Of a stretch of DNA of 64,000 nt, positions 8,922 to 54,997 are shown piece by piece. The translations under genes and the position numbers were made by a program. Under the pieces are notes generated by a model. That model saw nothing but the letters and a program-made list of their open reading frames with translations. It was not told the DNA's origin and ran no database searches. Source of the DNA: Podarcis muralis (Eukaryota); the NCBI RefSeq assembly GCF_964188315.1, contig NC_135658.1:41850001-41914000 (forward strand), written 5' to 3'. Position 1 is the first letter of the stretch. Every line of letters begins with the position of its first letter.

Positions 8922-9919
8922 TTTAAAAAAATATTGCATTTTTGAAAGTTACAGAGAAAAGAATAAATTAAAAGTTACACCCAAATACACAAAAAGAAAA
9001 GAAAAAAAGAGAAAAAATGAAAGAAAAAATACAAATAAGAGAAAAAAGGAAAAAAGAATTTAAAAGATACACACAATTGTTCAAAGGATACAAACTGTAA
9101 TTTGAATATTCTATACAAAAGGCTCCCAGAAAGAAATTGCATTAATATTTCTTCTTTGCTTTCTTTCCTTACAATCACTTTCTTTCTGTTCCATTAAACT
9201 TGTTTGAATCCCTGATAAGTTAATTGACTCTATCCCTTTGCGGCTTCAACACTTCTCATTAGTTACCAATAATCTGTATTCCTTTATTTAAATCAATTTC
9301 CCCCCATTATTTCTGTGAAATTTATATAAGCACAACCAGGTATTATTTTTGGAACCATATTTAGTCAAGTACTGTAGTTTTTGAAGCAAACCCATTCCTT
9401 TTTTACATTGTCGCCTGAGTGGTTTCTTATTAGTTCTGTCATTTTGGCTAGTTCAAGATACTCGCACAACTTCAATTGCCACTTGTATTTTGTTGATATT
9501 AACTCACTTTTCCAGTATTTTGCTATTGATATTCTAGCTGCTGTTGTCGCGTAAAGAAACACTCTTTTATATTCATTTGAGATGCTTATCATTAAAATGC
9601 CTAATAGAAAAGCTTCAGCTTTCTTTAAAAATGTATGTTTTAGGATTTTCTTTAGTTCTTCATAAATCATGTCCCAAAATTTTTACATTTGGGGACATGT
9701 CCACCACATGTGGAATAAGGTTCCTTCATTTTGTTTACATCTCCAACACTTATTACTGTTATTTTTATTTATTTTGGCTAATTTGCTTGGGGTCAGGTAC
9801 CATCTGTGGATCATTTTCATAAAGTTTTCTTTTATAAGATAGCACGTGGTGAATTTTAAATCTGTTTTCCAAAGTTTCCCCCATTTTCCCATCTCGATAG
9901 GATAACCAAAATCATGTGG
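8922..9919 (-). mobile_element. 5'-truncated L1 (ORF2 C-terminus, 3' UTR, A-rich tail)
   Basis: KCWRCKQNEGTLFHMWWTC finger; about 24-bp TSD TTATCTGATATACTATGTTGTTTT at 8898-8921 and 9920-9943. Confidence 0.88.
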
Positions 9920-12517
9920 TTATCTGATATACTATGTTGTTTTATATGTATGCTGGAAACTGCCCTGCGATTCCTATGTAATTAATCAAGGGTGGCCTAA
10001 AAGAATGGCAAACAAATAAAGTGCCAAAAAGATTCCCACTGCTAAATAACTAGCCCTTTGGAGAGGGGGTCACAGTTGCCAGGTAGGAATGCAAGTTACA
10101 TGCTGGAGCCCTAAGCTACTCACGTTCTGAGCTTAGTGGGGGAAGGCAGTTCAGAAAGCTCTCAGTTACAGATGAGTTGAGGATAGAGAGCACAACATTT
10201 TAATATTTTGCCATTGCAACCATGGATGTCTAAAGCTAGCCCTCCGTGGCTCTGCCAGGAAAAGCTTTTCTCTCTCCCTGAAAATAAGCTACCCCAAGTC
10301 AAGCAGAATGCTTGGGGTGGGGGAATGGGACACCAGAGGGTGAGGCCTTCATGCCTAGCAATGGGTCAATTTTGGTTTCTCTCAGTTTTCCATTTTTACA
10401 ATCAGCGCTCCACATTTCCATATCAGTTTAAAGTTTTTTTTTGTCCTCAAGAAAATCCATCTGCATTTAGTTTAAATTTCTCCTATTATACACATTTTTA
10501 TGCAATTTTGCCTAATATATACACTTTGTTGCAAAGCTATGTCTTCTAATAGAATTCATTTTTTAATTTTCACTAATATATGCATTTCTCTCTCTGTGTG
10601 TGTATACATACATACATGCATATGTGTATGCATTTTTCTACCCATTACATGGTTTGCATTGCAAAATTCAAATGATAACTGTATTACAAATGTGTCGTCA
10701 TTTACTGTATTAAGCTTATGTTTTTTTAAAAAAGATGTTGTGTTTGGTTTGCATTCAGAAAGTGTGAATTAGATAAGCTTGCCTTTAAATGAGAAATTAA
10801 TCTGATTTCTCCTACATCCCTATTCACAGCACAAGAAAAACACGGGAAGTGGCTGTAAACCAGGACAGACTATTTGTCCATCTAGCCCAGATAGAATTGT
10901 GACGGGCCATTAGCAGTTCCCCAGGGTCTCAAGCAGGGGCCTTTCTCATCACCTGCTACCTTAAACCTGCTACCTGGTACTCCCCAGATTCCATATAATG
11001 CGTATGGCTCTCCCACCATGATTTATATATCCTCGGTGTTGTATTGGGATTTGGATCCTATGGAAGCAGGGCCAGCCCTATCATTAGACACTTGTCTCTG
11101 GCAGCAGATTTGGAGAGGAACTGGGGTGGGCTCTCTCCTGCCGGTTGTCCAAGCTCACTCTGAGTGTGCCTCCTTGCCAACTTCTTCCACCGTGCTTCAG
11201 TCCCTGTTGCCAGCGGCCGCTTGTCGTATTTCTTGTGGCAAAATGGCTTAGGGCGACAATGTATGTGTGTTTGCACACAAAGGAATTAGTCTAAGTGTGT
11301 TTTATGGGACTGGCTTCCTGTGGCTACGTAGGATTGTAGCCTTAGTTTTGTTTTAATTTCTGGTCTCTAGACTTGAGAAAATTCCAGTGCCATAGACATT
11401 TAAACCAAAGAATTCTGGGAACTGTAATTTAAGGGTATTGGGAATTGTAGTTCTGTGAGGGGTAAACTACATTTCCCCAAGATATATTTTTTTGGGGGGG
11501 TGTCTTTTAAATGTGCTTTAAATAAAAACACTGGGAGTCATTCCTTAGTCCCTGAGCCCCTTCTCTTTAAGCTCAGCTAAATCCCCCATTAGGTGGGAGA
11601 CGTTCAAGGGGTTCCCAGGTTACCTTGGTTACAGAACAAATACAGCTTTCCGATAGGTTCTCGGCATATATGAATTTTTATAGAAACACTCCCCTCAACT
11701 TAAATTTCAGTGTGCGGGGGGCGGAATTTTCTGAGTGAGACATTCCTCTGCAGTTTCTCTAAAAGGGTTGGGCTCTCTCACTTTTTCTCTCTGCCTTTGT
11801 CTTTTTTCTCTCTGAATGCTGGTTTTATGACCTGATTATGAACCCACCCCTGGAGGAACCGGTTTCTCCAGCACAATTGAGTTACCTCAGAACATAATAA
11901 TGTACACTGCCAGGAAAAAAAAAGCCTTGTGGGCACACTTGTTTGCTCCCTGAGCTGAGAGAGGATCTGAGAGCCTTGGCCACCAACAGCAAGCTAGCTT
12001 TTTCCACAGATAGGAGGACTGTCCAGGAAGTTGGACAGGTGCCTCAGGGATGTAAGATATAGGATAAAATGCAAATAGATAGAATCATAGAGTTGTAGGG
12101 AGCCTTATGGGCCATCTCGCTTAATCACTTGCTTGTGGCAGAAAATTCAGAGGTAGGTGGTGGTCAAGCTGTTGCCAAGCTTCTCTTACTGTCAATAGGT
12201 TTTATGTGTGCAAACTGAATTATGGGGGACAGTGGATGGAACCTCCCACCTGCCATCCCTTATCGTACTAGTTGCAGGCAAAAAAAGTGGAACTGCATTA
12301 TGTGTCAGCTGGGTGTGGTGACAATAAAAACTTTACGTTCAAAGGACCTTGTCCCCCTGTACATCCCTGAATGAGTCATAGAACTCAGCCTCATGGAAGC
12401 CAGTGGGAGGGAGGGAGGGACAAATAAGATATCTGAGAAGTCACAGATGCTCTGCCAGATCCTTTCACACCCCATGTTGTGTTTTACTGTATAAACTGAT
12501 GTGATATGCACAGACTA

Positions 12518-12873
12518 AAGGTAAAGGTAAAGGAACCCCTGACCATTAGATCCAGTCGTGACTGACTCTAGGATTGTGGCACTCATCTCGCTTTATTGGC
12601 CGAGGGAGCTGGCGTACAGCTTCCGGGTCATGTGGCCAGCATGACTAATCCGCTTCTGGTGAACCAGAGCAGCGCATGGAAACGCCATTTACCTTCCCGC
12701 TGGAGCGGTACCTATTTATCTACTTGCACTTTGATGTGCTTTCAAACTGCTAGGTTGGCAGGAGCTGGGACTGAGCAATGGGAGCTCACCCCGTCATGGG
12801 GATTCGAACAGCCAACCTTCCGACCGGCAAATCCTAGGCTCTGTGGTTTAACCCACAGCGCCACCTGCGTCCC
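12518..12873 (-). mobile_element. Sauria SINE
   Basis: GGGACGC..GTGGCGCTGTGGG head, (ACCTTT)n tail; 13-bp TSD TATGCACAGACTA. Confidence 0.92.
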
Positions 12874-13301
12874 TATGCACAGACTACTATTATTTTATTA
12901 ATTGTTTTACTGATTGTTCTGCAAACCACTTTGTGATCATCTGTGGTCTATTAATACTGGAAAGAACTAATGCTTCTTGCTTGCCTGGATGGAGGAATGT
13001 GGGCGTGGATGTAGAAAGCTCTGTTTTTTGTGCAGCTGGAAGGCAACCTATTGTACAAAGGTCACATTGATTGCCCTGCGTACCTATGTCCTAAGGGGAT
13101 GCAGCCTTTGGGTTGGAAAACGTTTCTCCAACCCTGTCCTAGAGCAGGCGAAAAAGCGCGTTTCTTACAGAAGGCAGATACAGATGTGGAATGCAGATGT
13201 GTGCGATATCTTAGTAGGGCGTCCTAACTTATGCATACTGGCTTTCCAGTCAAAGTGACAAAGATAACAGTCGACCTTCTGACCTCTCTTTCTCTTTTTA
13301 G

Positions 13302-13456
13302 TTGTGGCAGCTGCTCACGCCCTCTCCGTAAACACACCTCAGAAGCAAGTGCAAGTGAAGAAAGGAGATAATATCACCCTACCGTGTACCTATGAAAGCT
13401 CTGTTGTTACTCCAGCTAAGGGGGACATTGTTGCCTGGATGAAAATGCCAGAAGAG
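13302..13456 (+). CDS. GPA33: GPA33 exon 2 (Ig V-set first half: VVAAAHALSVNTPQ...ITLPCTY...IVAWMKMPEE)
   Basis: Polypyrimidine TTTTTAG acceptor, GAG|GTGGGC donor, 155 nt; B-strand Cys and C-strand Trp. Confidence 0.93.
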
Positions 13457-14515
13457 GTGGGCAGCCATGGTGCAAGGCATATGATACGCATGAGTGTCTG
13501 GGAGAAAATGGCACTCTGTTAAGAAACAGGTGCGCCAAGACACCAGAGGAGCCTCTTTGACCTCTGTCAGTGAGCAGCCTTTCAAGGGTTCCTTTGGTCT
13601 TGGCTGCAAGAGGATGGGGCCAGATGGTAGCCTGAATTTTGTTTTAATTCCAGATCTTTAGTCTTGTGGCACATAACATCAGGCTGTCACTTTGGCTTTG
13701 ATCCAGCACTTGACAGAGGCCGCCAATCATGCATAGCAACTGGTGGCTCCAGATGGGGGCACATATCCCCTAGGGCCTATCCAGTTCAATTCAATGTGAG
13801 CAGGATGAGCAGTACTGGTTCAGATGGTTCAAAAGCAAGTCTGCCTGTGTTCAGCGGAGTTAACTCCCAACTAAATGTCCAGTACCCCAGGTCTGTGCAT
13901 GACTACATGGAGGCAAGTCCCATTGAATAACAATATTGTGCACTGGGAGCATTGCCTACTAATGTTTAAGGCTCCAAAGGAAAGGATTTGGTTTGACTGA
14001 TTGTTTGGAGGCAATGCAGCAGATTGACTTGGCCCCTAAAACAACTTTAAGCTCATGGAATATAAGTTTCTGATCATATCTTCCCTGCTGCTGCCAACCA
14101 TGTACATAAAATGTATTTCTTGAGGGTTGAGAGGTAGGGATGGAAAGACCTGTCAATTTCAGTTTGCTCACTTTCTCATTTTTTTCTGCCTTAAATTCAG
14201 CTCTCCAAATTTTTCCAGCAGTTTGTGTTTGCTTTGTTCATGAAAATTCATCATCATGAACATATATTTGTAATGCAGCTCTTGACTAATGTACACACTT
14301 AAAAGTGATTTCTTCCCCTACTATAATGCATTTTTTGATATATGTTTTTACTACTGAACTGCCTCAGCAATGAGACAATTCAGGAGACAGGGATAGGTTG
14401 GGTCTCCTTGTGTTTTGTTTGTTCATTTCGTGGTTAAAAATACTATAGTGACAAACAAAAGATTTGAGCCACAGTAATTAAGTCTTTTAAACTGATACTC
14501 TTCTCTTATTGTTAG

Positions 14516-14729
14516 GCAGAATTTATTAACCGGTACCTTGATGATGGTGGAACATGGATTAGTGATGCTTATAAAGGTCGGGTGAACTTCTCTAGCAATA
14601 CAAATAATCATGACATTGGCATCATCCTCAGTCAGGTGACCTTGAATGACAATGGTACCTATGAATGCTCAGTCCGTCTTCGCGATGATCCTCCCTTGAC
14701 ACATTCAACAATGGAACTTTTGGTCCTTG
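14516..14729 (+). CDS. GPA33: GPA33 exon 3 (Ig V-set second half: YKGRVNFS...DNGTYECSV...ELLVL)
   Basis: TTAG acceptor, G|GTAAGG donor, 214 nt; D-x-G-x-Y-x-C motif. Confidence 0.95.
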
Positions 14730-16220: not shown

Positions 16221-16964
16221 GTAAGCAGTGAGATGTTGGTACTTTGTGAAAATCGGTTTTCTGTATTCAGTTTTTAAATGCATGCAAATATTTTGAAGAT
16301 TATTAATGTAAAAAGAGGAATGAAAAACCATCATTTTAATTTAGTCCTTAAAGTGTTATCTAGCAAGCACAGTGTAGATGCGATCTTCCCTTGTCCATTC
16401 TAATGTTTTCCATCTCTCACTGGTTATCTCTGCCATTTTCTTCATGCCTGATTTCATTCAACGGCAGCAACCGTTTTAGGCACACCTGATATGTGTGAAC
16501 CCAGAATTGACTCAAAGACATCACAAAAAGGAGTGGAACATGGTGGGGGCGAAATGGGGGTAATTGCAGGCTTTTTCCATGGTGCTTCAAATATACACAA
16601 TTTCACTTAAAAGTGTGGTGCCTTGGAACGTAACCCCCACATAAATTGGGAGTTTACTGTAATAAATTCTGGATGCAACAAGGCAAAAGTGGCACTCTTG
16701 TGACTTTCATGCTAGCTCGATTGCAATGAATCCAGAATCATGCTCACTGCCTGGTTCTTCTCTCACAATGATTAAAATCATTACTTCGAAAACATACATT
16801 AGTTAATGTAGGGTGAACATAGACAATTGTTCACCATGAGGCCATTAACCACAGTGGGGCTTGTAATTAATGGGCAATCTAGTTGCTTCTCTCTCCTCCT
16901 CCTGCCAAGTGGTGGTAAGGAGGACTCTATCATGCTCTGGCCTCTCCAGTTCTCTGATGCACCT

Positions 16965-17372
16965 TGTCAGGGAACTGCCATCGGAGGAACAGGTGGTGGA
17001 GGGGCTCAGGGAGGCTGGGAGAGACTCAACAGCTGAAGCAGGAACCAGCCGGGGGAGGAGTGGATCTCTGAGGGAATGCGAGCAGGAGGGAGGGCTCAGA
17101 GACGCTTCCAGCGAGAACAGTGGGGAGATATCTGAAGCTCCCATAGGGAGACCCACGCCTCGCCGGAAACTGTCACGCCGTGAGTCCAGAAGACGTGTTT
17201 CCGTTAAGGAGCTTTTATGCTGGAAACGATTCCGAAAGCAACCACTGTCGGAATCTGCAAGTGACTAGAGCAGCCATGTCTGAGGGGCTCCGTCACAGAC
17301 AGAGGTTTGTGAACGTGCACAGACTCTGAGGGACTACGCTTTTACGCACAAGCAGCTCATCATCCCATCACA
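16965..17372 (+). repeat. 5' LTR (408 bp)
   Basis: Direct repeat of 21684-22091 with 2 substitutions. Confidence 0.98.
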
Positions 17373-17374
17373 GC

Positions 17375-17385
17375 ATTCCGACAGT
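17375..17385 (+). promoter_or_regulatory. Self-priming primer-binding site
   Basis: ATTCCGACAGT, 2 nt after the 5' LTR, is the exact reverse complement of LTR 17244-17254 ACTGTCGGAAT; no TGG tRNA-type PBS. Confidence 0.85.
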
Positions 17386-17417
17386 CTTTGTAAGCTGCTG
17401 GTGCAGGAAAAGGCATC

Positions 17418-18431
17418 ATGAGTGACCCAGCCGGAACCGGAGAAGCAGGGGTTGGAGCTGGTCCAAGCTTGGAAGAAAGGTACCGAGCGTTGGAGATCCA
17501 ACTGGCGCTGCAGACGGCGAGGCTTGAGGAGAGAAGGGCGCAGGATGCAGACAAGAAGGGGAAAACCACCCAGTTCACCAGAAAGGTACCAGGATTGGTG
17601 CAGAAGTTTGGGGGGGACCCCAAGGACTACCATGCCTTTAGAACAGAGATGCAATATGCTCTCAATGTGCAGTTTGAGGAATTCCCTGACGAGGAATCGC
17701 GAGTGGCTTTCATGATTGGGCATCTTGAAAAGGGGGCGCGGGACTGGGTTCGGCCCCTGATGGCAACGCATAATGACATCCTAAAGGACACAATGAAGTT
17801 CTTTCGTGCAATGGATCTCATGTTTTCCAGCGATATTGAGAAGGGAGTGGTGCGCAGACAGCTAATGGCTTGCAAGCAGGGAAGCCGATCTGTCCGTGAG
17901 TACTGGACTGAATTCACCATGCTGGTGCACAGATTGGGGTGGGACTTATCGGCGGAACCCATTCAAATGCTTTTTGAAGAAGGTCTTGCTTCGGCGGTGA
18001 AAGATGAGCTTTCCCGGGGGCCCAGGGCGGATTCTATGGATCAGCTAACCAAATCTGCGCTGACCATAGGAGCGCGCCAGGAGGCGAGAGCTTTGGAGAG
18101 GCGGGAAGGGAAGGGGGAACGTTGCAAGGAGTTCCGCATTCCAGACATTCCAGAGCCAGCTTTCCCGCCGGCAGAGCCGATGGAAATCGGAACAACGCGC
18201 GCGCGCGCAGTTTCAAAGCCCAGTGAAGGGGGGAAGAAGGAGGGAAAAGGCGCCCGGAAATGCTATCTCTGCCAACAGCCAGGTCACTTTGCCAGAGTAT
18301 GCCCCCAGAGGAAGGAATGGCAAGGGATGGTGGGGGCTGTGGAGGGAGGAGTGGAGGAAATACCGGAGCAAGTAAAAGCCAACGCCTGGCTGCCACCGTC
18401 GGGGCACAGCAGCCAGGCCAAAGAGCAGTGA
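17418..18431 (+). CDS. gag: Gag (337 aa) with CCHC zinc knuckle
   Basis: Retrotransposon capsid motif CKQGSRSVREY..EF; CYLCQQPGHFARVC; intact ORF. Confidence 0.93.
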   Translation: MSDPAGTGEAGVGAGPSLEERYRALEIQLALQTARLEERRAQDADKKGKTTQFTRKVPGLVQKFGGDPKDYHAFRTEMQYALNVQFEEFPDEESRVAFMIGHLEKGARDWVRPLMATHNDILKDTMKFFRAMDLMFSSDIEKGVVRRQLMACKQGSRSVREYWTEFTMLVHRLGWDLSAEPIQMLFEEGLASAVKDELSRGPRADSMDQLTKSALTIGARQEARALERREGKGERCKEFRIPDIPEPAFPPAEPMEIGTTRARAVSKPSEGGKKEGKGARKCYLCQQPGHFARVCPQRKEWQGMVGAVEGGVEEIPEQVKANAWLPPSGHSSQAKEQ

Positions 18432-20419
18432 AAGTGCCCACGCCAGAACCTCCTAAACCCGCCCTAGTGATAGAAGTGTCACTAGAGTTGCAAAACGGAT
18501 ACCCTCTAAAGATAAAGGCGCTGTTGGACTCAGGCAGCTCCTGCAATTTCATGAGCAAAGAGTTTGCAGCTGAACACCAGATACGGACGATCCCTTTAAG
18601 CAATCCCCTGCAGGTGACCACGATCGATGGCAGGGAACTGTTGGGAGGAGAAGTCAGCTTGCAGACCGTCCCAATGATAATGAAGGTGGCAAGGCACACA
18701 GAACTGATAGCGTTTAATGTGGCCACCTTGGGAGGGGCTCCCATTATTTTGGGGATGAGCTGGCTGGCGTTACATGATCCGCTGGTGGGCTGGCATCAGA
18801 GAGTGGTTTCCTTTGGCTCCGCACATTGCTTAGAACACTGCAAGGAGGGAAAGGGTTCAGCAGGAGCCCAAGCTACCCTAGCAGGGACGGAAGTAACGGA
18901 GAAAGTGAAGGTACCACGACAATATGCAGATCTCAGCGACGTGTTCAGCGAAAGGGAAGCTGACCAATTACCACCGCATAGACCCTTTGATTGTCAAATC
19001 AATTTACTGCCTGGGGCACAGCTCCCTGTAGGCAAGTTGTATGCCATGTCAGACAGAGAGATACAGGTGCTAAGAGAGTTTATTGACAAAAACCTGAAGA
19101 GAGGTTTCATCAGAGAGTCAAGAGCGGTGGGAGGTAGCCCAGTGTTTTTTGTGGATAAAAAAAACACGGACAAGCCGAGACTTGTGTGTGACTTTAGGGC
19201 CCTGAACGCAGTGTCAGAGCCCCTGGCTTTCCCCATGCCCAGGATTGATGACATTTTGAACAGGGTGCGGAAGGGAAAGATTTTTACAAAGCTGGACCTA
19301 AGGGGGGCGTACAACCTGATACGTATAAGGAAAGGGGATGAATGGAAAACCACCATGTTCACCCCTTTGGGGGCATTTGAATATCTCGTTATGCCATTTG
19401 GATTACAAGCAGGCTCGGCGTGCTTTCAATCGCTGATGAACCACGTACTAGGGCCTTTGCTTTACAAGAATTGTGTGGCCTTCCTAGATGACGTGTTGGT
19501 GTATTCTGAGAATGAGGAGCAACATGTAAGAGACATCAGAGAAGTGTTGAGCAGGCTGCTAGCCAACCGGCTGTGGGTGAAACTGGAGAAGTGTCAGTTT
19601 CATACCAAGGAGGTGGAGTTCCTGGGGTACCGCCTGTCAGACAAGGGATTGGCCATGGATCCCGGCAAGGTCCAGGCAGTGCTGGAATGGAAAACACCCA
19701 AAACAAGGAAGGATGTGCAGAGGTTCCTAGGGTTTGGGAACTTTTATCGTAAGTTCATCCGAAACTTTGCCCACCTGACGGCGCCCATTACGGACTGTCT
19801 CAGCAGTAAGAAGAAATTCGTTTGGACTGAGGAGGCGGAGCGAGCTTTTGAGGAGCTAAAAAGGGCCTTCGCCTCTGAAGAACAACTTCTGCATGTGGAT
19901 TTACAAAAAAAGATGAGAGTCGAAACGGACGCATCAGACAGAGCCATAGGGGCGGTGCTTCTTCTGCAGCCAGGGAAGGAGGAGTCAGAGTGGAGGCCGT
20001 GTGCTTTTTTCTCGCGAAAGCTGAACAAATCCGAGAGGAACTACACGGTGTACGATCGAGAACTTCTTGCTATTCATGAGGCTTTTCGGAGATGGAGGCA
20101 CCTGCTAATTGGCGCACAACATAAGGTGCAAGTGTGCACTGACCACAAGAACCTAGAGTATTGGAGAACGGCACGAGTGCTCAACCAACGGCAGTTGAGG
20201 TGGGCCCAGGAGTTCTCCAAATTTAACTTTGAGATTCATTACGTGCCAGGCCCAGAGAACGTTAGGGCGGACGCTCTCTCACGCAAACCTGAATATTTGG
20301 AGGGGGAGGGAGCACCCGAAGAAAGACATGTCATTCCAGAGGACCGCTGGGTGTGTGGGGCGGCATTGGTGGGGCGGCATTGGTGGGGCCAGAAAGACCA
20401 TGGGAAGCAGTGGCCATAG
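18260..20419 (+). pseudogene. pol: Pol N-terminal part (protease, RT, RNase H), -1 frame to gag, truncated by frameshift
   Basis: LLDSGS protease; MPFGL and FLDD RT; TDASD, RELLAI, TDHKNL, ADALSR RNase H. Real start is probably via frameshift near 18377; sequence after 20370 is out of frame. Confidence 0.92.
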
Positions 20420-21987
20420 ATTTTATGACTGATCTGCCAAGGTCCAGAGGGAAAACAGCCATCATGGTTGTGGTAGACCTGTTAACCAAAATGGCACACT
20501 TTATAGCCTGCTCACATGCTGTCACGGCAGAAGAAACAGCTAAATTGTTTGTAGAAAATGTGTTTAGGTTGCATGGCGCCCCCTTGAGGGTGGTTTCTGA
20601 CCGAGGGAAACAATTTACTTCCAGGTTCTGGAGGAAGCTCATGAGCTTACTGCAGGTAGAGGTTAATTTCTCGACTGCCCGGCATCCTGAGACCAATGGG
20701 CAGGCGGAAAGAGCCAATGGCATCCTCCAGCAATATTTGAGGTGTTATGTCAATGACAGAGAGAATGATTGGGTGGAGAAGTTGGCATTGGCGGAATTTG
20801 CCTACAACAATGCGGAGAACGTGTCCACGGGGATGAGCCCCTTTTTGGCTAATTACGGGTGCCATCCCAGGGCTTTCCCAGGGGGGGAAGGGGAGAGATG
20901 GAGCGTTCCAGCTGCCGAACAGTTCGTAGAAGAAATGGAAGCGATCCATCGCCAGCTCCAACTTAACTTAGACAGGGCCAAGGAGGAATATAAGAGGCAG
21001 GCAGACAAACACAGGAGAGAAGGTGAAACCATTAGGGCGGGGGACCAAGTGTGGCTGTCAACCCAAGGGTTACCCTTCAAAGGGGGTTGTAAAAAGTTAA
21101 GACCCAAAAGATTGGGCCCATTTGAAATCACACAACAGGTCAACCCAGTGGCTTTCAGACTCCGGTTACCGAACCACATGAAGCTGCACCCAGTTTTCCA
21201 CAGGTCATTGCTGTCACTGTATAAAGGGGACAGAGAAGGGAGGGTCACTCGGGGACCAGCAATGGAGGAAAGGGAACAAAGCTACCATGTAGCGGAGATC
21301 CTCGATTCCAGGTGGAAGGGAGATCAAGTAGAGTATTTGGTAATGTGGGAAGGGGAACCGGAGTCGGAAAACACCTGGGTCAGGGCAGAGGATGTCAATG
21401 ACGAGGTTTTAATAGAAACTTTTCATCAGAGGTTCCCACGCAAGCCTCAGCCTGTAGCGAGGTTCCGGAGGGAATACTTTGCCACCACCGACGAAGAAGA
21501 GGAGTTGGAGGGGTTCACAGAGTCCGAGGAGGAGGAGGATTCAGCGAGCCGGGACGGCGACCGATGGAGGGAAATGTTTGAGACGTCTGAAGATGAAGAA
21601 GATTCCTTTTGGGGTTTTACCTCCTCACCTCCCAGAGGAGAGGAAACGGGAGGGGGTGAAGGGGGCCCTGGAGGGGAGGTGGATGTCAGGGAACTGCCAT
21701 CGGAGGAACAGGTGGTGGAGGGGCTCAGGGAGGCTGGGAGAGACTCAACAGCTGAAGCAGGAACCAGCCGGGGGAGGAGTGGATCTCTGAGGGAATGCGA
21801 GCAGGAGGGAGGGCTCAGAGACGCTTCCAGCGAGAACAGTGGGGAGGTATCTGAAGCTCCCATAGGGAGACCCACGCCTCACCGGAAACTGTCACGCCGT
21901 GAGTCCAGAAGACGTGTTTCCGTTAAGGAGCTTTTATGCTGGAAACGATTCCGAAAGCAACCACTGTCGGAATCTGCAAGTGACTAG
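20385..21987 (+). pseudogene. pol: Pol C-terminal part (integrase core, GPF, chromodomain, acidic tail, LTR-encoded tail)
   Basis: PW..IDF, VVSDRG, NGQAERAN DDE core; RLGPF; YHVAEILD...YLVMW...NTW chromodomain; stop lies inside the 3' LTR. Confidence 0.92.
21670..21683 (+). promoter_or_regulatory. Polypurine tract
   Basis: GGAGGGGAGGTGGA directly before the 3' LTR. Confidence 0.85.
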
Positions 21988-22091
21988 AGCAGCCATGTCT
22001 GAGGGGCTCCGTCACAGACAGAGGTTTGTGAACGTGCACAGACTCTGAGGGACTACGCTTTTACGCACAAGCAGCTCATCATCCCATCACA
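21684..22091 (+). repeat. 3' LTR (408 bp)
   Basis: Direct repeat of 16965-17372; preceded by a polypurine tract. Confidence 0.98.
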
Positions 22092-22879
22092 CACCTGTTC
22101 CAAGCTCTCCCTTGTGGCACTGACACAACCAGGGTTCCTGTATAGCAATTAAGAGATCCAGACTTTTTAAGCCTACATGTGTCAGGCTGGGTACGTGGGA
22201 GGTTGCAGCACACTCATCTGTCTTGGAACAGATTATATCATTGTTGAAAGACAGGGCAACATTGCACTCTCCATATCTGTTTCCTTAATGTGAAACCACA
22301 AACATTTGTTTGCATTTGATGTTGAACAAACATAACCTGCTCCCGTTGGGATGCTGATTCCAGTGCCGATGTAGCGCTGGCTGAAGTGTCCAATGCCACT
22401 ACCCCATGAGATGCTGTGAGATCACTTGATGTTTATGCAGCCTAATGATGTCAGCAAGATACTTGCTACCCTCTGTTCCCCCTTGATCTCTGCCCCTCTT
22501 GGTTTATTCATCATCATCATAAACTTTATTGCACTAGCCAAAGGCCATGACATCATTCACAAAGGAAACAAAAAGAAAGTCAACAATAACCATAAAAGCC
22601 AAAAAAACACACCAGGCACTGTGAATACAAAGACCAACAATCACATCTCCTAGAAATTATTTGTTGCATATGATATAATAGCAGGGGGTTCTCAGGTAGA
22701 ATGCGCCAGCTTAAATGTCTGAATCACCTTTGCAGTTGACCACTATTTTATCTAGTTCTTTTCTCCTGATCTTCTTAGCTGCCAATGCATATGGTGCTAG
22801 TTTATAAGTTATGAAGTTCTTGATTTATTAAATGTAGCAGACTTGTTTGGTCGGGAACATGGTTAATGCTTCATTACTT

Positions 22880-24450
22880 GAGGGGATGGTTCCTGCAGCC
22901 ACTCATAATGAAGCCTCGTCCCCATCTGTTGCTTTGGACTAACTACTGACCAGTTGCTAATGCCCACTTTTTAGGAAATGTGGCTGAGAAGGTTATGATG
23001 GGGCACTTACAGTCATTCTTGAATGGTGTAGATTATCGAGCTCTAGTCCAAGTTCAGACCTGGCCATGGACGGGACTGAATCAGCCTTGGTCAGCCTGAT
23101 GGATGACCATTATCAAGAATGGGACAAGGGGAGTATGACCTTGCTTCCTTTGCAATTTATGTGTGGCTTTTGATACCTTTGACCCTGCATATCAGGCACA
23201 GTATTACATTATTCTAGCCATATTTATAGAGCGAAGAGTAGCATTGGCAGATTGTTTTTCAGCCCCTGGCAGTTAAGCCATAGGACACTGGAGGGAGCTG
23301 TTTTATTCCCAATGCTATTTCCTATCTATATGAAGCCATCAGGACTGGTCATGAAGGAATTTAGGACAGGATGCTGTCAGTAAGCTGATGGCATTCAGCT
23401 CTATTTCTCCATAACATCCGAATCAGGAGAGGCCATACAGGAGCTGAGCTGGTGCCTGGATGCAGTGATGAGCTAGATGAGGGCAAATAAATTGAGCCTA
23501 ATTTCTGACAGGACAAAGGCCGTATGGATCTATGGTTCTGGTGCATGGGAAACTGGCCAATTGCCTGCTCTGAAGCGGGCTGCATTTCTTCTGAAGGAGC
23601 AAGCCTAGGCATGTTCCTAGATCTAGGTTTTGTCCCTAGAGGTTTAGTGGCATTGGTAGCAAGGGGTACATTTTACCATCTTTAAGGTAAAGGTAAAGGG
23701 ACCCCTGATTAGGCCCAGTCGTGGCCAACTTTGGGGTTGCGGTGCTCATTTCGCTGCTGGCGTACAGCTTCTGGGTCATGTGGCCAGCGTGACTAAGCCG
23801 CTTCTGGTGAACCAGAGCAGCGCACTGAAACGCCGTTCACCTTCCGGCCAGAGCGGTACCTATTTATCTACTTGCACCTTGACGTGCTTTCGAACTGCTA
23901 GGTTGGCAGGAGCAGGGACCGAGCAACGGGAGCTCACCCCGTTGCGGGGATTCGAACCGCTGACCTTCTGATCGGCAAGTCCCAGGTTCTGTGGTTTAAC
24001 CCACAGCGCCATCTGCGTCCCTTTACCATCTTCAGCTGGTATTTATTTACTTAATTTATTTAGATGATTTTTGAACCACTTAATCAAAGAGCTAAGTGGT
24101 GTGCAAATAAAATTGCAAATAAAGCTAAAACCTACAAAACAACTGAACCATTTTAATTAAATTAAAATACGACAGCTGCCTGTTCCATGACTGGGATGGC
24201 CTGACCACAGTAGTCCAGGTATTGGTAACTTCAAGACTGGATTACTGCAACACACTACATAAGGCTTTCCTTGCTCCTGATTGGGAAACTGCTGTTGGTG
24301 CAGGGTGTGGCTCTATGTTTGGGGACCAGAAGCGAGATCTTGTCCACATATTATACTTGTCCTCAAAGATCTGCACAGTCTACAGGTTTGTAACTTGGTC
24401 AAGTTCAAAATTTCCTAATTAGTACATAAAGCCCATAATAGCCAGCAACC
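22880..24450 (+). mobile_element. Decayed L2/CR1-clade LINE, interrupted by a Sauria SINE
   Basis: Degenerate RT motifs and LVTSRLDYCN at about 24222; ends approximate. Confidence 0.6.
23683..24021 (-). mobile_element. Sauria SINE
   Basis: Same head and tail as other copies; 11-bp TSD TTTACCATCTT. Confidence 0.92.
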
Positions 24451-25643: not shown

Positions 25644-26004
25644 AGCTAAAGGTAAAGGTACCCCTGCCCGTACGGGCCAGTCTTGCCAGACTCTAGGGTT
25701 GTGCGCTCATCTCACTCTATAGGCCGGGAGCCAGCGCTGTCTGCAGACACTTCCGGGTCACGTGGCCAGCGTGACAAGCTGCATCTGGTGAGCCAGCGCA
25801 GCACACGGAACGCTGTTTACCTTCCCGCCAGTAAGCGGTCCCTATTTATCTACTTGCACCTGGGGGTGCTTTTGAACTGCTAGGTTGGCAGGCGCTGGGA
25901 CCGAGCAACGGGAGCGCACCCCGCCGCGGGGATTCGAACCGCCGACCTTTCGATCGGCAAGCCCTAGGCGCTGAGGCTTTTACCCACAGCGCCACCCGCG
26001 TCCC
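25644..26004 (-). mobile_element. Sauria SINE (CpG-rich, young)
   Basis: 13-bp TSD AACTTAAAGAGTA; many intact CpGs. Confidence 0.92.
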
Positions 26005-44047: not shown

Positions 44048-45068
44048 TATTTGTTTATTATTACTATAACAAAAAAGTAAAATAGTTGGAGTAAAATGTA
44101 CACCTATAGCACTGAAAAAAAAATCATGAAACTAAGTCACTTACCTGCAACTCCAATTTCCAGGCAACCCTCAACCAGACTAGGACTGCATGCACATTAT
44201 AACTTTAAAGCACATTTCCCCTCTCAAAGAATTCTGGGCACTGTAGTTTATCTCTCACAGTTAGAATTCCCAGCAACTTGTAGCAAACTAGTGTCCTTGA
44301 GAGGGGAAACAGGATTTAAAGAGGTAATGTAGCCAAGTTTTGAATTGTCATGTGGTGTTCCACCCCCAACCTGCTACAGCCACAACAGTCTGCTTATAAC
44401 GATGCAGCAATCTCAGATTATAAAACCAAGGCTAATATCATTCTTTATAATACAAAAGTGGTTAAGAAACCTCAGATAAGACAGTGTCTACATTGAAAAA
44501 GTGGTCAACAGTGGTCCACTCCCCACAAAGTAGTAGACATTATCTGTTTAATTACGTATGTTTTTTGGCAGTTGAGTAACAATGGATGCCATCTCAAAAT
44601 ATAGTTTTCTGGTAGACCAGAGACTACATTTTCCCTGAGTTGAGCCTAAAAACATCACAGAAACTTGTCTGGGATGTTGAGATGCAACCTCAGAACTCAC
44701 AAAGCCACTGCTGACACCAAGAGAATTGGAAAGTGTCATCTTAGATCGAATGCTTTAAATGTGTCGGTGAATCCTATGTAATACTAGAAAACTCATTCTG
44801 TTAAATTTATTCTGTATGGATCCCTACGCATTCCACATTACACCACCCATGCACTAGGGGAAGTATTACAGGCTTGAGGAAAGCCTGGGTTTGCAAAAGT
44901 ACAAAAAACCAAAATCACACCATCTTTACATATCAACTGGTGGCTAGTCACAGGCAGTGAATCCTTCTAAACCTGCTTAGCAAACTTTCAGCTACTCCCT
45001 TAGTTACTGAATGACGTTTTATCCTGCTTTGCAGTCAAAGAAAACCTCCAAAGTGGCTTACAAATCAC

Positions 45069-47642
45069 CATTGAAGGAAGTCTGCAACGAAATTTTGGAG
45101 GGGAAGAAGGCACCCGAATCGTGGAAAGAAGCGTACATCACACTTATACCAAAAACTGAGACTGAGAAGAACCAGGTTAAGAACTACCGCCCTATATCAT
45201 TACTCAATGTGGATTACAAAATTTTTGCAGACATTTTGGCAAAAAGATTGAAAAGGGTATTGGTTGGAGAGATTCATAAGGACCAAGCAGGCTTTCTCCC
45301 AGGTAGACATTTGTCAGACAATGTGAGAAACATAATAGACATTATGGAATTATTAGAAACCAGTATTAATACTAAAGCAGTATTAATATTTGTGGATGCG
45401 GAGAAAGCCTTTGACAATATTTCTTGGAGTTTTATGAAAAAGAATCTACAAGGGATGGGGGTAGGCCAAGGTTTTGAGAATGGTATAGGTGCAATTTATT
45501 CTGAGCAAAAAGCAAAGTTAATTGTAAATAATGTGGTAACTGAAGAATTTAATATTGAAAAAGGGACACGACAGGGGTGCCCAATATCCCCACTACTTTT
45601 TATATCTGTCTTGGAGGTTTTGTTGAATATGATCAGAGGGGACCAGCTGATTAAAGGGATTCAGGTCGGAGCTAAACAGTACAAACTGAGAGCGTTTGCA
45701 GATGACCTGGTATTGACTTTACAGGAGCCAGACACTAGTACGAAAAGAGTTTTAGAATTAATTCAAATATTTGGTCAAGTAGCAGGCTTTAAGTTGAACA
45801 AGCAGAAAGCGAAAGTACTGGAGAAAAATTTAACAGCTCCGGAAAGAGAGAGGTTTCATAGCGAAACTGGTTTAACGGTAGCAAAGAAAGTGAAATACCT
45901 GGGGGTTAACTTGACGTCTAAGAATGTGAATTTATTTAAAGACAATTATGAGAAATGTTGGACAGAAATTAAGAAAGATTTAGAAATATGGTCAAATTTG
46001 AGACTTTCCTTGTTAGGCCGAATTGCTGTTATCAAGATGAATGTTTTGCCAAGAATGCTGTTTTTATTTCAAACATTGCAGATTTTGGATAAAATGGACT
46101 GTTTCAAGAGGTGGCAGAAAGATATATCTAAATTTGTCTGGCAGGGCAAAAAGCCCAGAATAAAATTTAAGATATTAACTGACGCAAAAGAAAGAGGGGG
46201 GTTTGCCCTGCCGGACTTAAAACTATATTATGAATCAGCGGCTTTCTGCTGGTTGAAGGATTGGCTACTCCTTGAGAACACGGACATTTTAGATCTGGAA
46301 GGTTTTAATAACAGGTTTGGTTGGTATGCATATATATGGTATGACAAGGTAAAATCTCATAAAGGTTTTAAAAACCACATTGTTAGGAAAGCACTATATA
46401 ATGTCTGGACTTGATATAAAGACTTGCTGGAAAACAAAACCCCTAGGTGGCTGTCACCAATGGAGGCTAAGGAAGTAAAAAAACTTAATATGGAATCTAA
46501 ATGGCCAAAATATTGTGAAATTCTAGAACAAGAAGGTGGAAAAGTGAAATTACAGAGCTATGAGAATTTGAAGTTTAAAGTAAGAGATTGGCTTCATTGC
46601 CTTCAGATAAATGAGGTATTCAAACAGGACAGGAAAATTGGCTTCCAGGTGGAGAGATCAAAATTAGAAACGGAATTGTTAGAACCCAATACCAAGAATT
46701 TGTCAAGAATGTATAACTTGCTGTTGAAGTGGAATACACAAGATGAAACAGTCAAATCAGCTATGATTAAGTGGGCACAAGACATTGGTCATGACATTAT
46801 GTTTGCTGACTGGGAACAGTTATGGACCACCGGTATAAAGTTCACGGCATGTAATGCCTTAAGAGAGAATATTATGAAAATGATTTATAGGTGGTACATG
46901 ACCCCAGTCAAGCTTGCAAAAATTTATCATTTGCCCAATAATAAATGCTGGAAATGTAATGAGACTGAAGGTACTTTTTATCACCTTTGGTGGACGTGCC
47001 CGAGGATTAAGGCCTTCTGGGAAATGATTTATAACGAAATTAAGAAGGTCCTTAAATGTACCTTTCACAAGAAACCAGAGGCCTTTCTCCTGGGCATGGT
47101 TGGCCAATTGGTGTCAAGGAAGGATAGGATGTTTTTTATGTATTCTACAACAGCAGCAAGAGTTCTTTTAGCAAAGTATTGGAAGACACAAGAACTACCC
47201 ACGCTGGAAGAATGGCAGATGAAGGTGATTGACTACATGGGACTGGCTGAGATGACTGGCAGAATCCGTGACCAAGGAAAAGAGACGGTGGAAGAAGACT
47301 GGAAGAAGTACAAAGATTATCTTAAGAATTGTTATAAAATTAATGAGTGTTAAAATGTCAAGGGTATTGGAAAAAATAGAATTACAGCTGTAAATGATTG
47401 GGTAAGAGAGGTAGGATCAAAGAAAGCGAACAATATGTTAATGAAGTGAGGGGTTGCTGAGAAAATCTTAAAATAGGGATGCAGAAAAGGGAGGCATGGG
47501 GAAGTCGGTGAAACAAGCTTAAGAAAAGGAGGTTATGAAATTATACGTGTTTATATGTCTTTTGTTTGTTTGTGTATTGTGAAGTGTATTGTGTTTATTT
47601 TATGTTGGAAAATTAATAAAAAAATTTATAAAAAAAACAAAA
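45069..47642 (+). mobile_element. 5'-truncated young L1 in MAEL intron 3 (antisense to MAEL)
   Basis: YRPISLLNVDYK, QGCPISPLLF, FADD, CWKC..H..C; one in-frame TGA at 46412-46414; AATAAA 47615 and A-tail; perfect 20-bp TSD CAAAGTGGCTTACAAATCAC (45049-45068, 47643-47662). Confidence 0.96.
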
Positions 47643-54551: not shown

Positions 54552-54997
54552 TGCCCCCATGCAAATAATGTTTATTGCCCCCCTCCTGAAGCTGCAATCA
54601 GCCATAGTGTGGGGAAGATTTTCCTGTTCTGTGGCTAATAGCTTCAGAGAGGGAATATTTGAATCCCTGATCCAAACTGGGGATCCCATGGCTACTCTTT
54701 AAGAAAGAAAAAGCTGTCGGGATTGCCAATGGAGCTTCAATGTTATCTTTTGTTTGAACCACACTTCAACAGTAACAGAAACTCCAACTTGAGTATATTC
54801 AGTTTGGTTTTAATTGGGACTCTAGATATTCACTTAGCAAACCGCAGACAGGAAAATAAAATAGTGTAGTATTACCTGGGTCTACTGCTGTGCATTGGTC
54901 ATTTTGTTGTTTTGGCTCTGCACATAAATGCTCCAGACTCTTGAATTTCAGGACTGTTTGGCCCCATTAGTTACACTCGTCCCCTCCGTTCTGTAGC

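What the first reader, a model, noticed from the sequence alone, without database searches (positions are those of the whole stretch)
21463..21618. Two tandem TND/LEDGF-IBD-interacting-motif-like (FxGF) sequences in a chromovirus integrase tail
Seen: right after the chromodomain the integrase frame reads FRREYF-ATTDEEEE-LEGF (21463-21516) and then WREMF-ETSEDEEDS-FWGF-TSS (21565-21618). Each is a short hydrophobic stretch ending in F, an acidic linker with CK2-type S/T-x-x-E/D sites, and (F/L)xGF. Established: this helix-acidic-FxGF layout is the motif by which KMT2A/MLL1, CDCA7L/JPO2, POGZ, IWS1 and DBF4/ASK bind the TFIIS-N-terminal-type domains of LEDGF/p75, HDGFL2 and elongation factors. 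As I recall it, the ASK motif (LFQTSEEKSEFLGF) is very close to copy 2. Other LTR elements also target via short integrase C-terminal motifs (Ty5-Sir4, Ty1-AC40, MLV-BET). Inference: this family may mimic the motif to tether integration to transcribed gene bodies, which fits its intronic position here. I do not know of this being described for vertebrate Gypsy elements, but I cannot search to confirm.
Basis: partly seen in the sequence, partly recalled or inferred. Interest (0 to 1): 0.85.

Follow-up and report, generated by a model that had tools for sequence, protein, structure and literature searches.

The report
FxGF motifs in lizard Gypsy integrase
A young Gypsy-type retrotransposon of a lacertid-like lizard has two short motifs in a disordered tail of its integrase that are conserved among its relatives and are built like the motifs cellular proteins use to dock onto the chromatin reader LEDGF, which suggests, without proving it, a new way for a retrotransposon to choose where it inserts.

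Summary
Both sequences lie in the integrase frame of a chromovirus-type LTR element (16965-22091; LTRs 99.5% identical; 5-bp target duplication), between the chromodomain and the polypurine tract.

They are not chance. In 16 related proteins (Podarcis muralis, P. lilfordi, two unnamed contigs) the helix aromatics, an 8-9-residue S/T- and mostly D/E-rich linker, and the F, G and F of FxGF are kept, while x and the rest of the tail drift:
- Motif columns have mean pairwise identity 0.72, against 0.25 for other tail columns.
- Conserved F and G residues use different synonymous codons.
- 214 other chromovirus tails (10,444 residues) contain no F-x-G-F.

The tail is a clade-specific, predicted-disordered extension. 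The same clade has lost the chromodomain's methyl-lysine aromatic cage, which 190 of 234 other chromoviruses keep.

The anatomy meets every sequence-level criterion of LEDGF/HRP2-type TND-interacting motifs. Binding, phosphorylation and gene-body targeting are untested, and no known motif-bearing protein came back from the PDB or Pfam searches. I found no published description.

Verdict: a real, selected short linear motif. Mimicry of LEDGF partners is the best-supported mechanism (about 0.5). It is a new variant of integrase tethering.

The parts
16960..16964 (.). Target-site duplication, left copy (CACCT)
   Evidence: Same 5 bases directly flank both LTRs.
16965..22091 (+). Whole LTR retrotransposon (Ty3/Gypsy, chromovirus type), 5127 bp
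   Evidence: Two 408-bp LTRs with TG..CA ends and 2 differences; gag, PR-RT-RNaseH and IN-chromodomain in order. It is the only copy in the window.
16965..17372 (+). 5' LTR
17418..18431 (+). gag (Retrotrans_gag, zinc knuckle), open
18260..21987 (+). pol (protease, RT, RNase H, integrase core, SH3-like domain, chromodomain, tail). Broken once: a deletion with a change of frame. The integrase zinc-binding H2C2 domain found in relatives gives no hit here.
   Evidence: Pfam hits show no PF17921. Relatives P0002 and P0153 carry PF17921. Comparison with L003.
21283..21432 (+). Chromodomain. Cage positions are Y (21283-21285), W (21346-21348) and E in place of the third aromatic (21355-21357).
   Evidence: Pfam Chromo E=5.6e-12. 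AF2 pLDDT above 90. Cage positions, mapped with PMC3350952.
21463..21516 (+). Motif copy 1: amphipathic helix-like stretch (F..YF), 8-residue linker (5 D/E, 2 T), L-E-G-F
   Evidence: AF2 predicts a helix over this stretch. It sits at the same offset (24-25 residues after the chromodomain) in 14 of 15 relatives.
21565..21618 (+). Motif copy 2: W..MF, 9-residue linker (6 D/E, 3 S/T), F-W-G-F
   Evidence: W, F, F, G and F are kept in 6-7 of 7 group-A proteins, and the linker is exactly 9 residues in 6 of 6.
21637..21683 (+). Polypurine tract region (85% purine), directly upstream of the 3' LTR, read through by the integrase frame
   Evidence: The PPT and LTR start are 92% identical at DNA level to L001 while the motif region gives no DNA match.
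21684..22091 (+). 3' LTR. Its first 304 bases (21684-21987) encode the end of the integrase frame.
   Evidence: The LTR-encoded end and its stop are shared with L001 and L002.
22092..22096 (.). Target-site duplication, right copy (CACCT)

Best explanation
The two sequences are functional short linear motifs in a clade-specific, intrinsically disordered C-terminal extension of the integrase of a lacertid-lizard chromovirus clade.

Shown:
- They are translated in the integrase frame.
- They are conserved at the protein level in position, spacing and key residues across relatives whose synonymous sites are saturated.
- They are absent from all other chromovirus tails sampled.
- The same clade has lost the methyl-lysine aromatic cage of its chromodomain.

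Inferred from anatomy: each module (amphipathic helix with aromatic anchors, 8-9-residue acidic/S-T linker, FxGF) mimics the TND-interacting motifs by which cellular proteins bind the integrase-binding domain of the H3K36me readers LEDGF/PSIP1 and HRP2/HDGFL2. The helix would sit in the first hydrophobic pocket, the two Phe of FxGF in the second, and the acidic (possibly CK2-phosphorylated) linker on the basic patch.

Inferred further: this tethers the integrase-cDNA complex to transcribed, H3K36-methylated chromatin, replacing the heterochromatin reading that an intact chromodomain provides in other chromoviruses.

My probabilities by step:
- Selected protein motif: about 0.9.
- Partner is a TND, with LEDGF/HRP2 first: about 0.5.
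- Consequence is integration targeting to gene bodies: about 0.4.
For: Relatives
- The search of 1.84 billion representatives and the profile search found the tail only in a few proteins. These are Podarcis muralis and P. lilfordi proteins plus two unnamed contigs, L001 and L002.
- These proteins form one NJ clade.

Conservation
- Copy-1 cores in group A are F-V-G-F, F-E-G-F, F-K-G-F, F-I-G-F and this copy's L-E-G-F. Copy 1 is lost in 2 proteins.
- Group B has F-Q/R/H-G-F in 9 of 9 proteins, at the same offset.
- Copy 2 is F-R/L/W-G-F in 6 of 7 group-A proteins.
- Ten motif columns chosen in advance have mean pairwise identity 0.72. The other 68 tail columns have 0.25, and none of 100,000 random column sets reaches the motif value. 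The chromodomain has 0.59 and the x position 0.14-0.19.
- Linker length is 8-9 residues in all 20 modules of copies 1 and 2.

Protein-level, not DNA-level, constraint
- Third-codon-position identity is 0.45-0.50 even where the amino acid is identical. Tail pN is 0.29-0.47 against pS 0.7-0.9.
- Conserved G and F use GGG/GGT and TTC/TTT in different copies.
- There is no blastn match across the motif region, while the PPT is 92% identical.

Specificity
- There is no F-x-G-F in 214 non-family tails. This includes a 592-residue frog tail with 40% D/E.
- The median chromovirus tail is 22 residues.

Disorder and helix
- AF2 gives pLDDT below 50 for the tail and a helix over the copy-1 anchor. There is no sign of docking onto the integrase's own domains.

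Fit to the family definition
- The definition is in PMC9987994. Having two motifs in one protein is also seen in JPO2 and CDC7-ASK.

Cage loss
- The third cage aromatic is lost in 7 of 7 group-A proteins and the first in 6 of 7.
- All three are lost in 8 of 9 group-B proteins; the ninth (P0267) keeps an F at the third cage position.
- 190 of 234 other chromoviruses keep all three (positions per PMC3350952).
Against: - No binding, phosphorylation or insertion-site data exist here.
- Sequence searches returned no known TIM-bearing protein. The PDB profile search gave 0 hits at E<=10. The single-sequence PDB searches gave only chance hits at E about 1. Pfam gave nothing. This is expected for a short motif, but it means the likeness rests on anatomy alone.
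- This copy's first motif has L for the first Phe.
- The group-B linker has no D/E (4-5 S/T instead), so it would be acidic only if phosphorylated.
- AF2 predicts no helix for copy 2.
- The sample is 16 proteins from one clade, mostly one species, several from decayed copies or gene models. The tail gain and the cage loss therefore count as about one evolutionary event.
- Synonymous sites are saturated, so no formal dN/dS could be given.
- It is unknown whether the tail stays on the mature integrase.
- The one relative seen in genomic context lies in a V2R gene cluster, which is not an obvious germline-transcribed gene body.
Confidence: 0.5

Rival explanations
1. The modules are selected short linear motifs, but for a partner other than a TND domain. 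One possibility is direct histone binding, since acidic stretches with aromatic anchors are typical of histone chaperones. Another is an unrelated docking site, for example for nuclear import, stability or assembly.
For: The conservation evidence shows constraint, not the partner. No known TIM protein came back from any search. The tail sits next to a chromatin-reader fold that has lost its cage, so some other chromatin contact is plausible.
Against: The invariant G between two aromatic residues and the fixed 8-9-residue spacing from an amphipathic helix are the specific marks of the LEDGF/HRP2-type motif (PMC9987994). Generic acidic-aromatic histone-binding stretches do not need them (my knowledge). 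Other aromatic-acidic motifs I considered have a different residue order.
Confidence: 0.25
2. The modules do bind TND proteins (LEDGF/HRP2, or IWS1, TFIIS, Elongin A, MED26, PPP1R10), but the benefit is not choice of insertion site. It could instead be, for example, nuclear retention or stability of the integrase.
For: TND-TIM contacts organise transcription elongation generally (PMC9987994). The anatomy alone cannot tell the outcome.
Against: The motifs sit on the integrase, next to the domain that targets integration in other chromoviruses (PMC3350952). Their gain coincides with loss of that domain's reading cage. The known use of LEDGF by integrases is tethering.
Confidence: 0.15
3. Chance: the motifs are a by-product of translating purine-rich, low-complexity DNA upstream of the polypurine tract, in a frame that is open only because the copy is young.
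For: The region is GA-rich and several frames are open there. The motif pattern was defined after seeing it.
Against: Two modules arise in 0.015% of composition-preserving shuffles. There is no F-x-G-F in 10,444 residues of other tails, including a 40% D/E frog tail. The motif is conserved across relatives with saturated synonymous sites.
Confidence: 0.03
4. The conservation reflects a cis-acting nucleic-acid element of the 3' untranslated or PPT region, not a protein motif.
For: The PPT and LTR start just downstream are 92% identical at DNA level between the window and L001.
Against: There is no DNA-level match over the motif region itself. Conserved residues use different synonymous codons. 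The variable x codon sits inside the motif. First and second codon positions are better kept than third positions.
Confidence: 0.02

Closest known systems
TND-interacting motifs / IBD-binding motifs of cellular LEDGF and HRP2 partners (KMT2A, JPO2/CDCA7L, POGZ, IWS1, CDC7-ASK, MED1, DPF3a; fly JIL-1 with JASPer)
   Same: Disordered context, short amphipathic helix with aromatic or aliphatic anchors, an acidic S/T-containing linker within the published 8-16-residue range, and an FxGF core. Two motifs in series also occur in JPO2 and ASK (PMC9987994; JIL-1 in bioRxiv 10.1101/624023).
   Different: It is carried by a retrotransposon integrase, not a cellular transcription factor. No sequence search links it to any of these proteins. 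Binding and phosphorylation are untested. In this copy the first Phe of module 1 is Leu, and the group-B linker is S/T-rich without D/E.
Lentiviral integrase tethering by LEDGF/p75 (and HRP2)
   Same: An integrase would use the same host tether to reach H3K36-methylated, transcribed chromatin.
   Different: By established knowledge, lentiviral integrases bind the IBD through the folded catalytic-core dimer interface, not through a linear FxGF motif. Here the proposed contact is mimicry of the cellular partners' linear motif in a disordered tail, which would be a convergent solution.
Short integrase-borne tethering motifs of other LTR elements and retroviruses (Ty5 with Sir4, Ty1 with AC40, MLV integrase tail with BET proteins)
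   Different: The motif, the partner and the predicted target compartment all differ. None of those uses a helix-acidic-FxGF module.
Chromodomain targeting in chromoviruses (MAGGY group I chromodomain reading H3K9me2/3; plant group II chromodomains lacking the first and third cage residues)
   Same: The same element class and the same position at the integrase C-terminus. The fold is kept (Pfam E=5.6e-12, pLDDT above 90).
   Different: The cage is degenerate in this clade. PMC3350952 says this state had been identified only in plant elements. A long acidic tail with FxGF modules is added, whereas typical chromovirus integrases end a median 22 residues after the chromodomain.

Membership tests
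Chromovirus (Ty3/Gypsy LTR retrotransposon with chromo-integrase) | LTRs with TG..CA ends and a target-site duplication | tested here: met
   408-bp LTRs with 2 differences; 5-bp duplication CACCT.
Chromovirus (Ty3/Gypsy LTR retrotransposon with chromo-integrase) | Domain order gag, protease, RT, RNase H, integrase | tested here: met
   Pfam hits in that order. The zinc-binding H2C2 domain of the integrase gives no hit in this copy.
Chromovirus (Ty3/Gypsy LTR retrotransposon with chromo-integrase) | Chromodomain at the integrase C-terminus | tested here: met
   PF00385 E=5.6e-12. Confident fold.
Group I (HP1-like) retrotransposon chromodomain | Three aromatic cage residues (Y24, W45, Y48 of the reference numbering) | tested here: not met
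   The window has Y, W, E. Group A lost the third in 7 of 7 proteins and the first in 6 of 7. Group B lost all three in 8 of 9 proteins; P0267 keeps an F at the third position. 190 of 234 other chromoviruses keep all three.
TND-interacting motif, LEDGF/HRP2 type | Lies in an intrinsically disordered region | tested here: met
   AF2 pLDDT below 50-55 across the tail in two models. No Pfam family matches.
TND-interacting motif, LEDGF/HRP2 type | Obligate short helix with F/V/L/I-type anchor residues | tested here: inconclusive
   A helix is predicted over the copy-1 anchor. None is predicted for copy 2, whose W and F lie at i and i+4 (with M at i+3 in this copy) and are conserved in 6-7 of 7 proteins. 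Folding on binding cannot be tested here.
TND-interacting motif, LEDGF/HRP2 type | Acidic linker of 8-16 residues enriched in D/E, G, S/T | tested here: met
   8 and 9 residues with 5-6 D/E and 2-3 S/T in the window. 8-9 residues in all 20 modules of copies 1 and 2 in relatives. The group-B linker is S/T-only (definition).
TND-interacting motif, LEDGF/HRP2 type | FxGF core (required by all known LEDGF and HRP2 partners) | tested here: met
   Copy 2 is F-W-G-F. Copy 1 is L-E-G-F here and F-x-G-F in 14 of 15 relatives.
TND-interacting motif, LEDGF/HRP2 type | Conservation of the motif residues against a drifting background | tested here: met
   0.72 against 0.25 mean pairwise identity; 0 of 100,000 random column sets reach it. 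Synonymous codon variation at conserved residues.
TND-interacting motif, LEDGF/HRP2 type | Physical binding to a TND/IBD domain | not testable with these tools
TND-interacting motif, LEDGF/HRP2 type | CK2-type phosphorylation of the linker that raises affinity | not testable with these tools
   S/T-x-x-D/E sites are present by eye in both linkers. There are no phosphorylation data.
TND-interacting motif, LEDGF/HRP2 type | A known motif-bearing protein returns as a named hit in sequence searches | tested here: not met
   The PDB profile search gave 0 hits at E<=10. The single-sequence searches gave only chance hits at E about 0.7-1.3 to unrelated proteins. Pfam gave none. Proteins I had in mind: KMT2A, JPO2, POGZ, IWS1, ASK, MED1.

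The most novel reading that the evidence does not exclude
A vertebrate retrotransposon clade exchanged its chromodomain-based reading of heterochromatin for mimicry of cellular TND-interacting motifs. It thereby hijacks the LEDGF/HRP2 gene-body tether through a disordered integrase tail. This would be convergent with lentiviruses in the host factor used but would work through a completely different interface. It would be the first linear-motif mimic of this interaction network in any mobile element or virus.
Probability: 0.4. Interest if true: 0.85.

Novelty: new variant of a known kind. Interest (0 to 1): 0.72.

Why it matters
Where an integrating element lands decides its harm to the host and its own survival. 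Only a handful of tethering mechanisms are known.

A chromovirus clade that drops its methyl-lysine cage and gains LEDGF-partner-like motifs would show three things:
- Target choice can be rewired by gain of a short linear motif.
- It would be the first natural TIM mimic.
- It would give direct sequence-level support to the so far unsupported idea that LTR retrotransposons use the LEDGF/p75 family. PMC10018349 raises this for flies and states that no interaction data exist.

The clade also offers a natural within-genome contrast, cage-intact chromoviruses against FxGF-tail chromoviruses, for studying insertion landscapes in lizards.

Tried and rejected
- A tail-only word search of the 5.8-billion-protein set found nothing at E<=0.01. 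The region is short and compositionally biased, so relatives were reached only with the whole integrase frame.
- No DNA-level tandem duplication explains the two copies.
- The PDB profile and single-sequence searches and Pfam on the tail gave no meaningful hit. A weak match to a papillomavirus E1 acidic end (E=0.67) is at chance level.
- Formal dN/dS failed because synonymous sites are saturated. I used pN against pS, codon-position identities and synonymous codons at motif residues instead.
- Considered and rejected:
  - The integrase 'GPY/F' module is a different feature. It lies inside the SH3-like domain, upstream of the chromodomain.
  - Adaptor-ear, FFAT-like and phosphatase-docking motifs were recalled from my own knowledge. 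They have a different residue order or are not shared by the relatives.
  - Intramolecular docking of the tail is not supported: there was no rise in model confidence in the full integrase model.
- Nine literature searches were run. None found a description of FxGF or TIM motifs in a retrotransposon integrase.
- I could not identify the host gene or test the intronic claim.

Slips, stated as required:
- I also worked out there where pol is broken.
- My first notebook entry lists the bounds of the open frames of pol, and the output lists match bounds. The place of the break can be inferred from either.
- One search printed translations of decayed relatives with their stops.
- One search was a frame mistake, corrected.
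Full report
**1. What is there**

The finding lies inside a complete-looking LTR retrotransposon at 16965-22091 on the + strand.
- The two 408-bp LTRs (16965-17372 and 21684-22091) start with TG and end with CA. They differ at 2 positions.
- They are flanked by a 5-bp target duplication, CACCT. The insertion is therefore young.
- Pfam finds gag with a zinc knuckle, then protease, RT and RNase H, then integrase core, the Tf2-type SH3 domain and a chromodomain. This makes it a Ty3/Gypsy element of the chromovirus type.
- gag is open.
- pol is broken once, by a deletion with a change of frame. The integrase zinc-binding H2C2 domain that relatives carry gives no hit here.
- It is the only copy in the window.

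**2. The observation**

- Copy 1 (21463-21516) has an F..YF stretch, an 8-residue linker with 5 D/E and 2 T, then L-E-G-F.
- Copy 2 (21565-21618) has W..MF, a 9-residue linker with 6 D/E and 3 S/T, then F-W-G-F.
- The chromodomain ends at 21432.
- The 47 bases before the 3' LTR (21637-21683) are 85% purine and form the polypurine tract.
- The motifs therefore sit in a short stretch between the chromodomain and the tract.
- The frame stays open through the tract and about 100 codons into the LTR.
- The two copies are not a detectable DNA duplication.

**3. Chance**

- Shuffling the 84-residue tail gives one full module in 1.6% of 200,000 trials and two in 0.015%. The pattern was defined after the fact, so I looked for independent controls.
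- Among 264 related proteins, 214 non-family tails (10,444 residues) contain no F-x-G-F at all. One of these is a 592-residue frog tail with 40% D/E.
- The 192,961 residues outside the family hold two full-pattern hits, one of them in the folded RT.

**4. Relatives**

- A search of 1.84 billion cluster representatives with the integrase frame gave 78,189 hits. The tail aligned only in a few.
- A profile search and a search with a group-B protein added more.
- The named ones are all from Podarcis muralis or P. lilfordi. Two are unnamed contigs, L001 and L002.
- Two subgroups appear:
  - Group A (7 proteins with the window's): 50-70% identical in the SH3-chromodomain part.
  - Group B (9 proteins): about 42% identical in that part.
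- Together they form one clade in a neighbour-joining tree of 249 integrases.
- The tail itself is a clade-specific extension. Chromovirus integrases normally end a median 22 residues after the chromodomain, whereas these run on for 90-400 residues.

**5. Conservation**

Copy 1 sits 24-25 residues after the chromodomain in 14 of 15 relatives.
- Its core is F-x-G-F with x = V, E, K, I, Q, R or H.
- One relative has lost the G and one has lost the module.
- The window's copy has L for the first F.

Copy 2 is present in 6 of 7 group-A proteins, as F-R/L/W-G-F with a linker of exactly 9 residues.

I chose ten columns in advance from the motif definition: two helix anchors plus the first aromatic, G and F of each copy.
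- These have mean pairwise identity 0.72.
- The other 68 tail columns have 0.25.
- None of 100,000 random column sets reaches the motif value.
- The chromodomain averages 0.59, and the x positions 0.14-0.19.

**6. Protein or DNA constraint**

- Between the window, L001 and L002, third codon positions are saturated (identity 0.45-0.50 even under identical amino acids), while first and second positions are kept.
- In the tail, pN is 0.29-0.47 against pS 0.7-0.9.
- The conserved G and F residues use different synonymous codons in different copies.
- blastn finds no match over the motif region. It does find 92% identity over the polypurine tract and the LTR start, as expected for a cis-acting element.
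- The motifs are therefore kept as protein.

**7. Structure**

- AlphaFold2 models of the chromodomain plus tail, and of the whole integrase frame, give a confident chromodomain (pLDDT above 90).
- They predict a helix over the anchor of copy 1.
- The rest of the tail has pLDDT below 50, with no sign that it docks on the integrase's own domains.

**8. An unexpected correlate**

The chromodomain's methyl-lysine cage needs three aromatic residues (PMC3350952).
- Of 234 other chromovirus integrases, 190 have all three.
- Group A lacks the third in 7 of 7 proteins and the first in 6 of 7.
- Group B lacks all three in 8 of 9 proteins; the ninth (P0267) keeps an F at the third position.
- In the window the cage reads Y, W, E.
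- That paper says cage-less retrotransposon chromodomains were known only from plants.
- Because A and B are one clade, the tail gain and the cage loss count as roughly one event. The pairing still suggests a change of targeting device.

**9. Mechanism**

The published definition of TND-interacting motifs is:
- an obligate short helix with F/V/L/I anchors;
- a flexible 8-16-residue linker rich in E/D, G and S/T, often phosphorylated by CK2;
- an FxGF that all known LEDGF and HRP2 partners need (PMC9987994).

Several partners carry two motifs. Every sequence-level criterion is met here.

My best explanation is that the tail mimics these cellular partners and docks the integrase on the host's H3K36me readers PSIP1/HDGFL2. 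That would direct insertion to transcribed chromatin.

Which steps are shown and which are inferred:
- Shown: a real, translated, selected, clade-specific linear motif in a disordered tail, with cage loss in the same clade.
- Inferred: the partner and the outcome.

Points against:
- No known motif-bearing protein returned from the PDB or Pfam searches.
- Copy 1 here has L for F.
- The group-B linker is S/T-only.
- The sample is small and nearly single-species.
- The one relative seen in context (L003) sits in a vomeronasal-receptor gene cluster.

**10. Known or new**

- Nine full-text searches found no description of such a motif in a retrotransposon integrase.
- PMC10018349 reports that fly LTR elements prefer H3K36me3 gene bodies. 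It speculates on the fly LEDGF homologue and states that no interaction data exist.
- Integrase tethering by host chromatin readers is a known kind. Linear-motif mimicry of LEDGF partners by a retrotransposon would be a new variant of it.

**11. Verdict**

- Observation: confirmed.
- Interpretation: partly supported. The anatomy and conservation hold; binding, targeting and the intronic argument are untested.
- Interest: 0.72.

Noticed in passing
window 21684-21987 (inside the 3' LTR); L001 and L002 gene ends: The integrase frame continues about 100 codons into the LTR. Its end (a basic run, an LLCWKR-type stretch, a serine-acidic end and the same stop position) is shared by the window, L001 and L002. 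pN is 0.33-0.60 against pS 0.68-0.74. This could be a conserved LTR-encoded integrase C-terminus, possibly a nuclear localisation signal, or a DNA-level LTR element.
   Followed up: partly
window 18260-21987: This young copy (LTRs 99.5% identical, intact target duplication) nevertheless lacks the integrase H2C2 zinc-binding domain. It is probably a non-autonomous deletion derivative that was mobilised in trans, or it was damaged soon after insertion.
   Followed up: partly
window 45011-46414 (+) and 53254-54597 (-): Two long ORFs whose only Pfam hit is reverse transcriptase RVT_1 (E about 1e-36). They are probably non-LTR retrotransposon copies.
   Followed up: no
window 23852-23997 and 25834-25979: A 146-nt direct repeat, 87% identical, with copies 2 kb apart downstream of the element. 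It is possibly two copies of a short interspersed repeat.
   Followed up: no
L003 (Podarcis muralis OZ076966.1, 22.29-22.32 Mb), about 9170-14650: A decayed group-A copy (71% nucleotide identity to the window's element, both FxGF modules still readable) lies in a cluster of vomeronasal type-2 receptor genes. It has been fused into the gene model XP_077774286.1, which is an annotation chimera.
   Followed up: partly
L004 (Podarcis lilfordi contig CANTUW010000103.1): One 17-kb stretch holds a group-A copy on the + strand (P0211, one F-I-G-F module) and a group-B copy on the - strand, whose module reads F-R-G-V.
   Followed up: partly
Group B proteins P0007, P0151, P0152, P0159-P0161, P0265-P0267: About 25 residues after F-Q-G-F these tails share a second conserved aromatic stretch of SYWWD type, of unknown meaning. 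Pfam no longer detects their chromodomain.
   Followed up: no
P0103 (Ranitomeya imitator, CAJ0953556.1): A frog chromovirus integrase has an independent 592-residue acidic tail (40% D/E in its first 150 residues) with an intact aromatic cage context and no hydrophobic-x-G-F at all. It served as a natural control.
   Followed up: partly
P0005, P0006 (Haematococcus lacustris, 2438 and 3046 aa): Two giant proteins of a green alga rank 5th and 6th among 1.84 billion representatives for this lizard integrase, at 37-39% identity. That is above most vertebrate chromoviruses.
   Followed up: no
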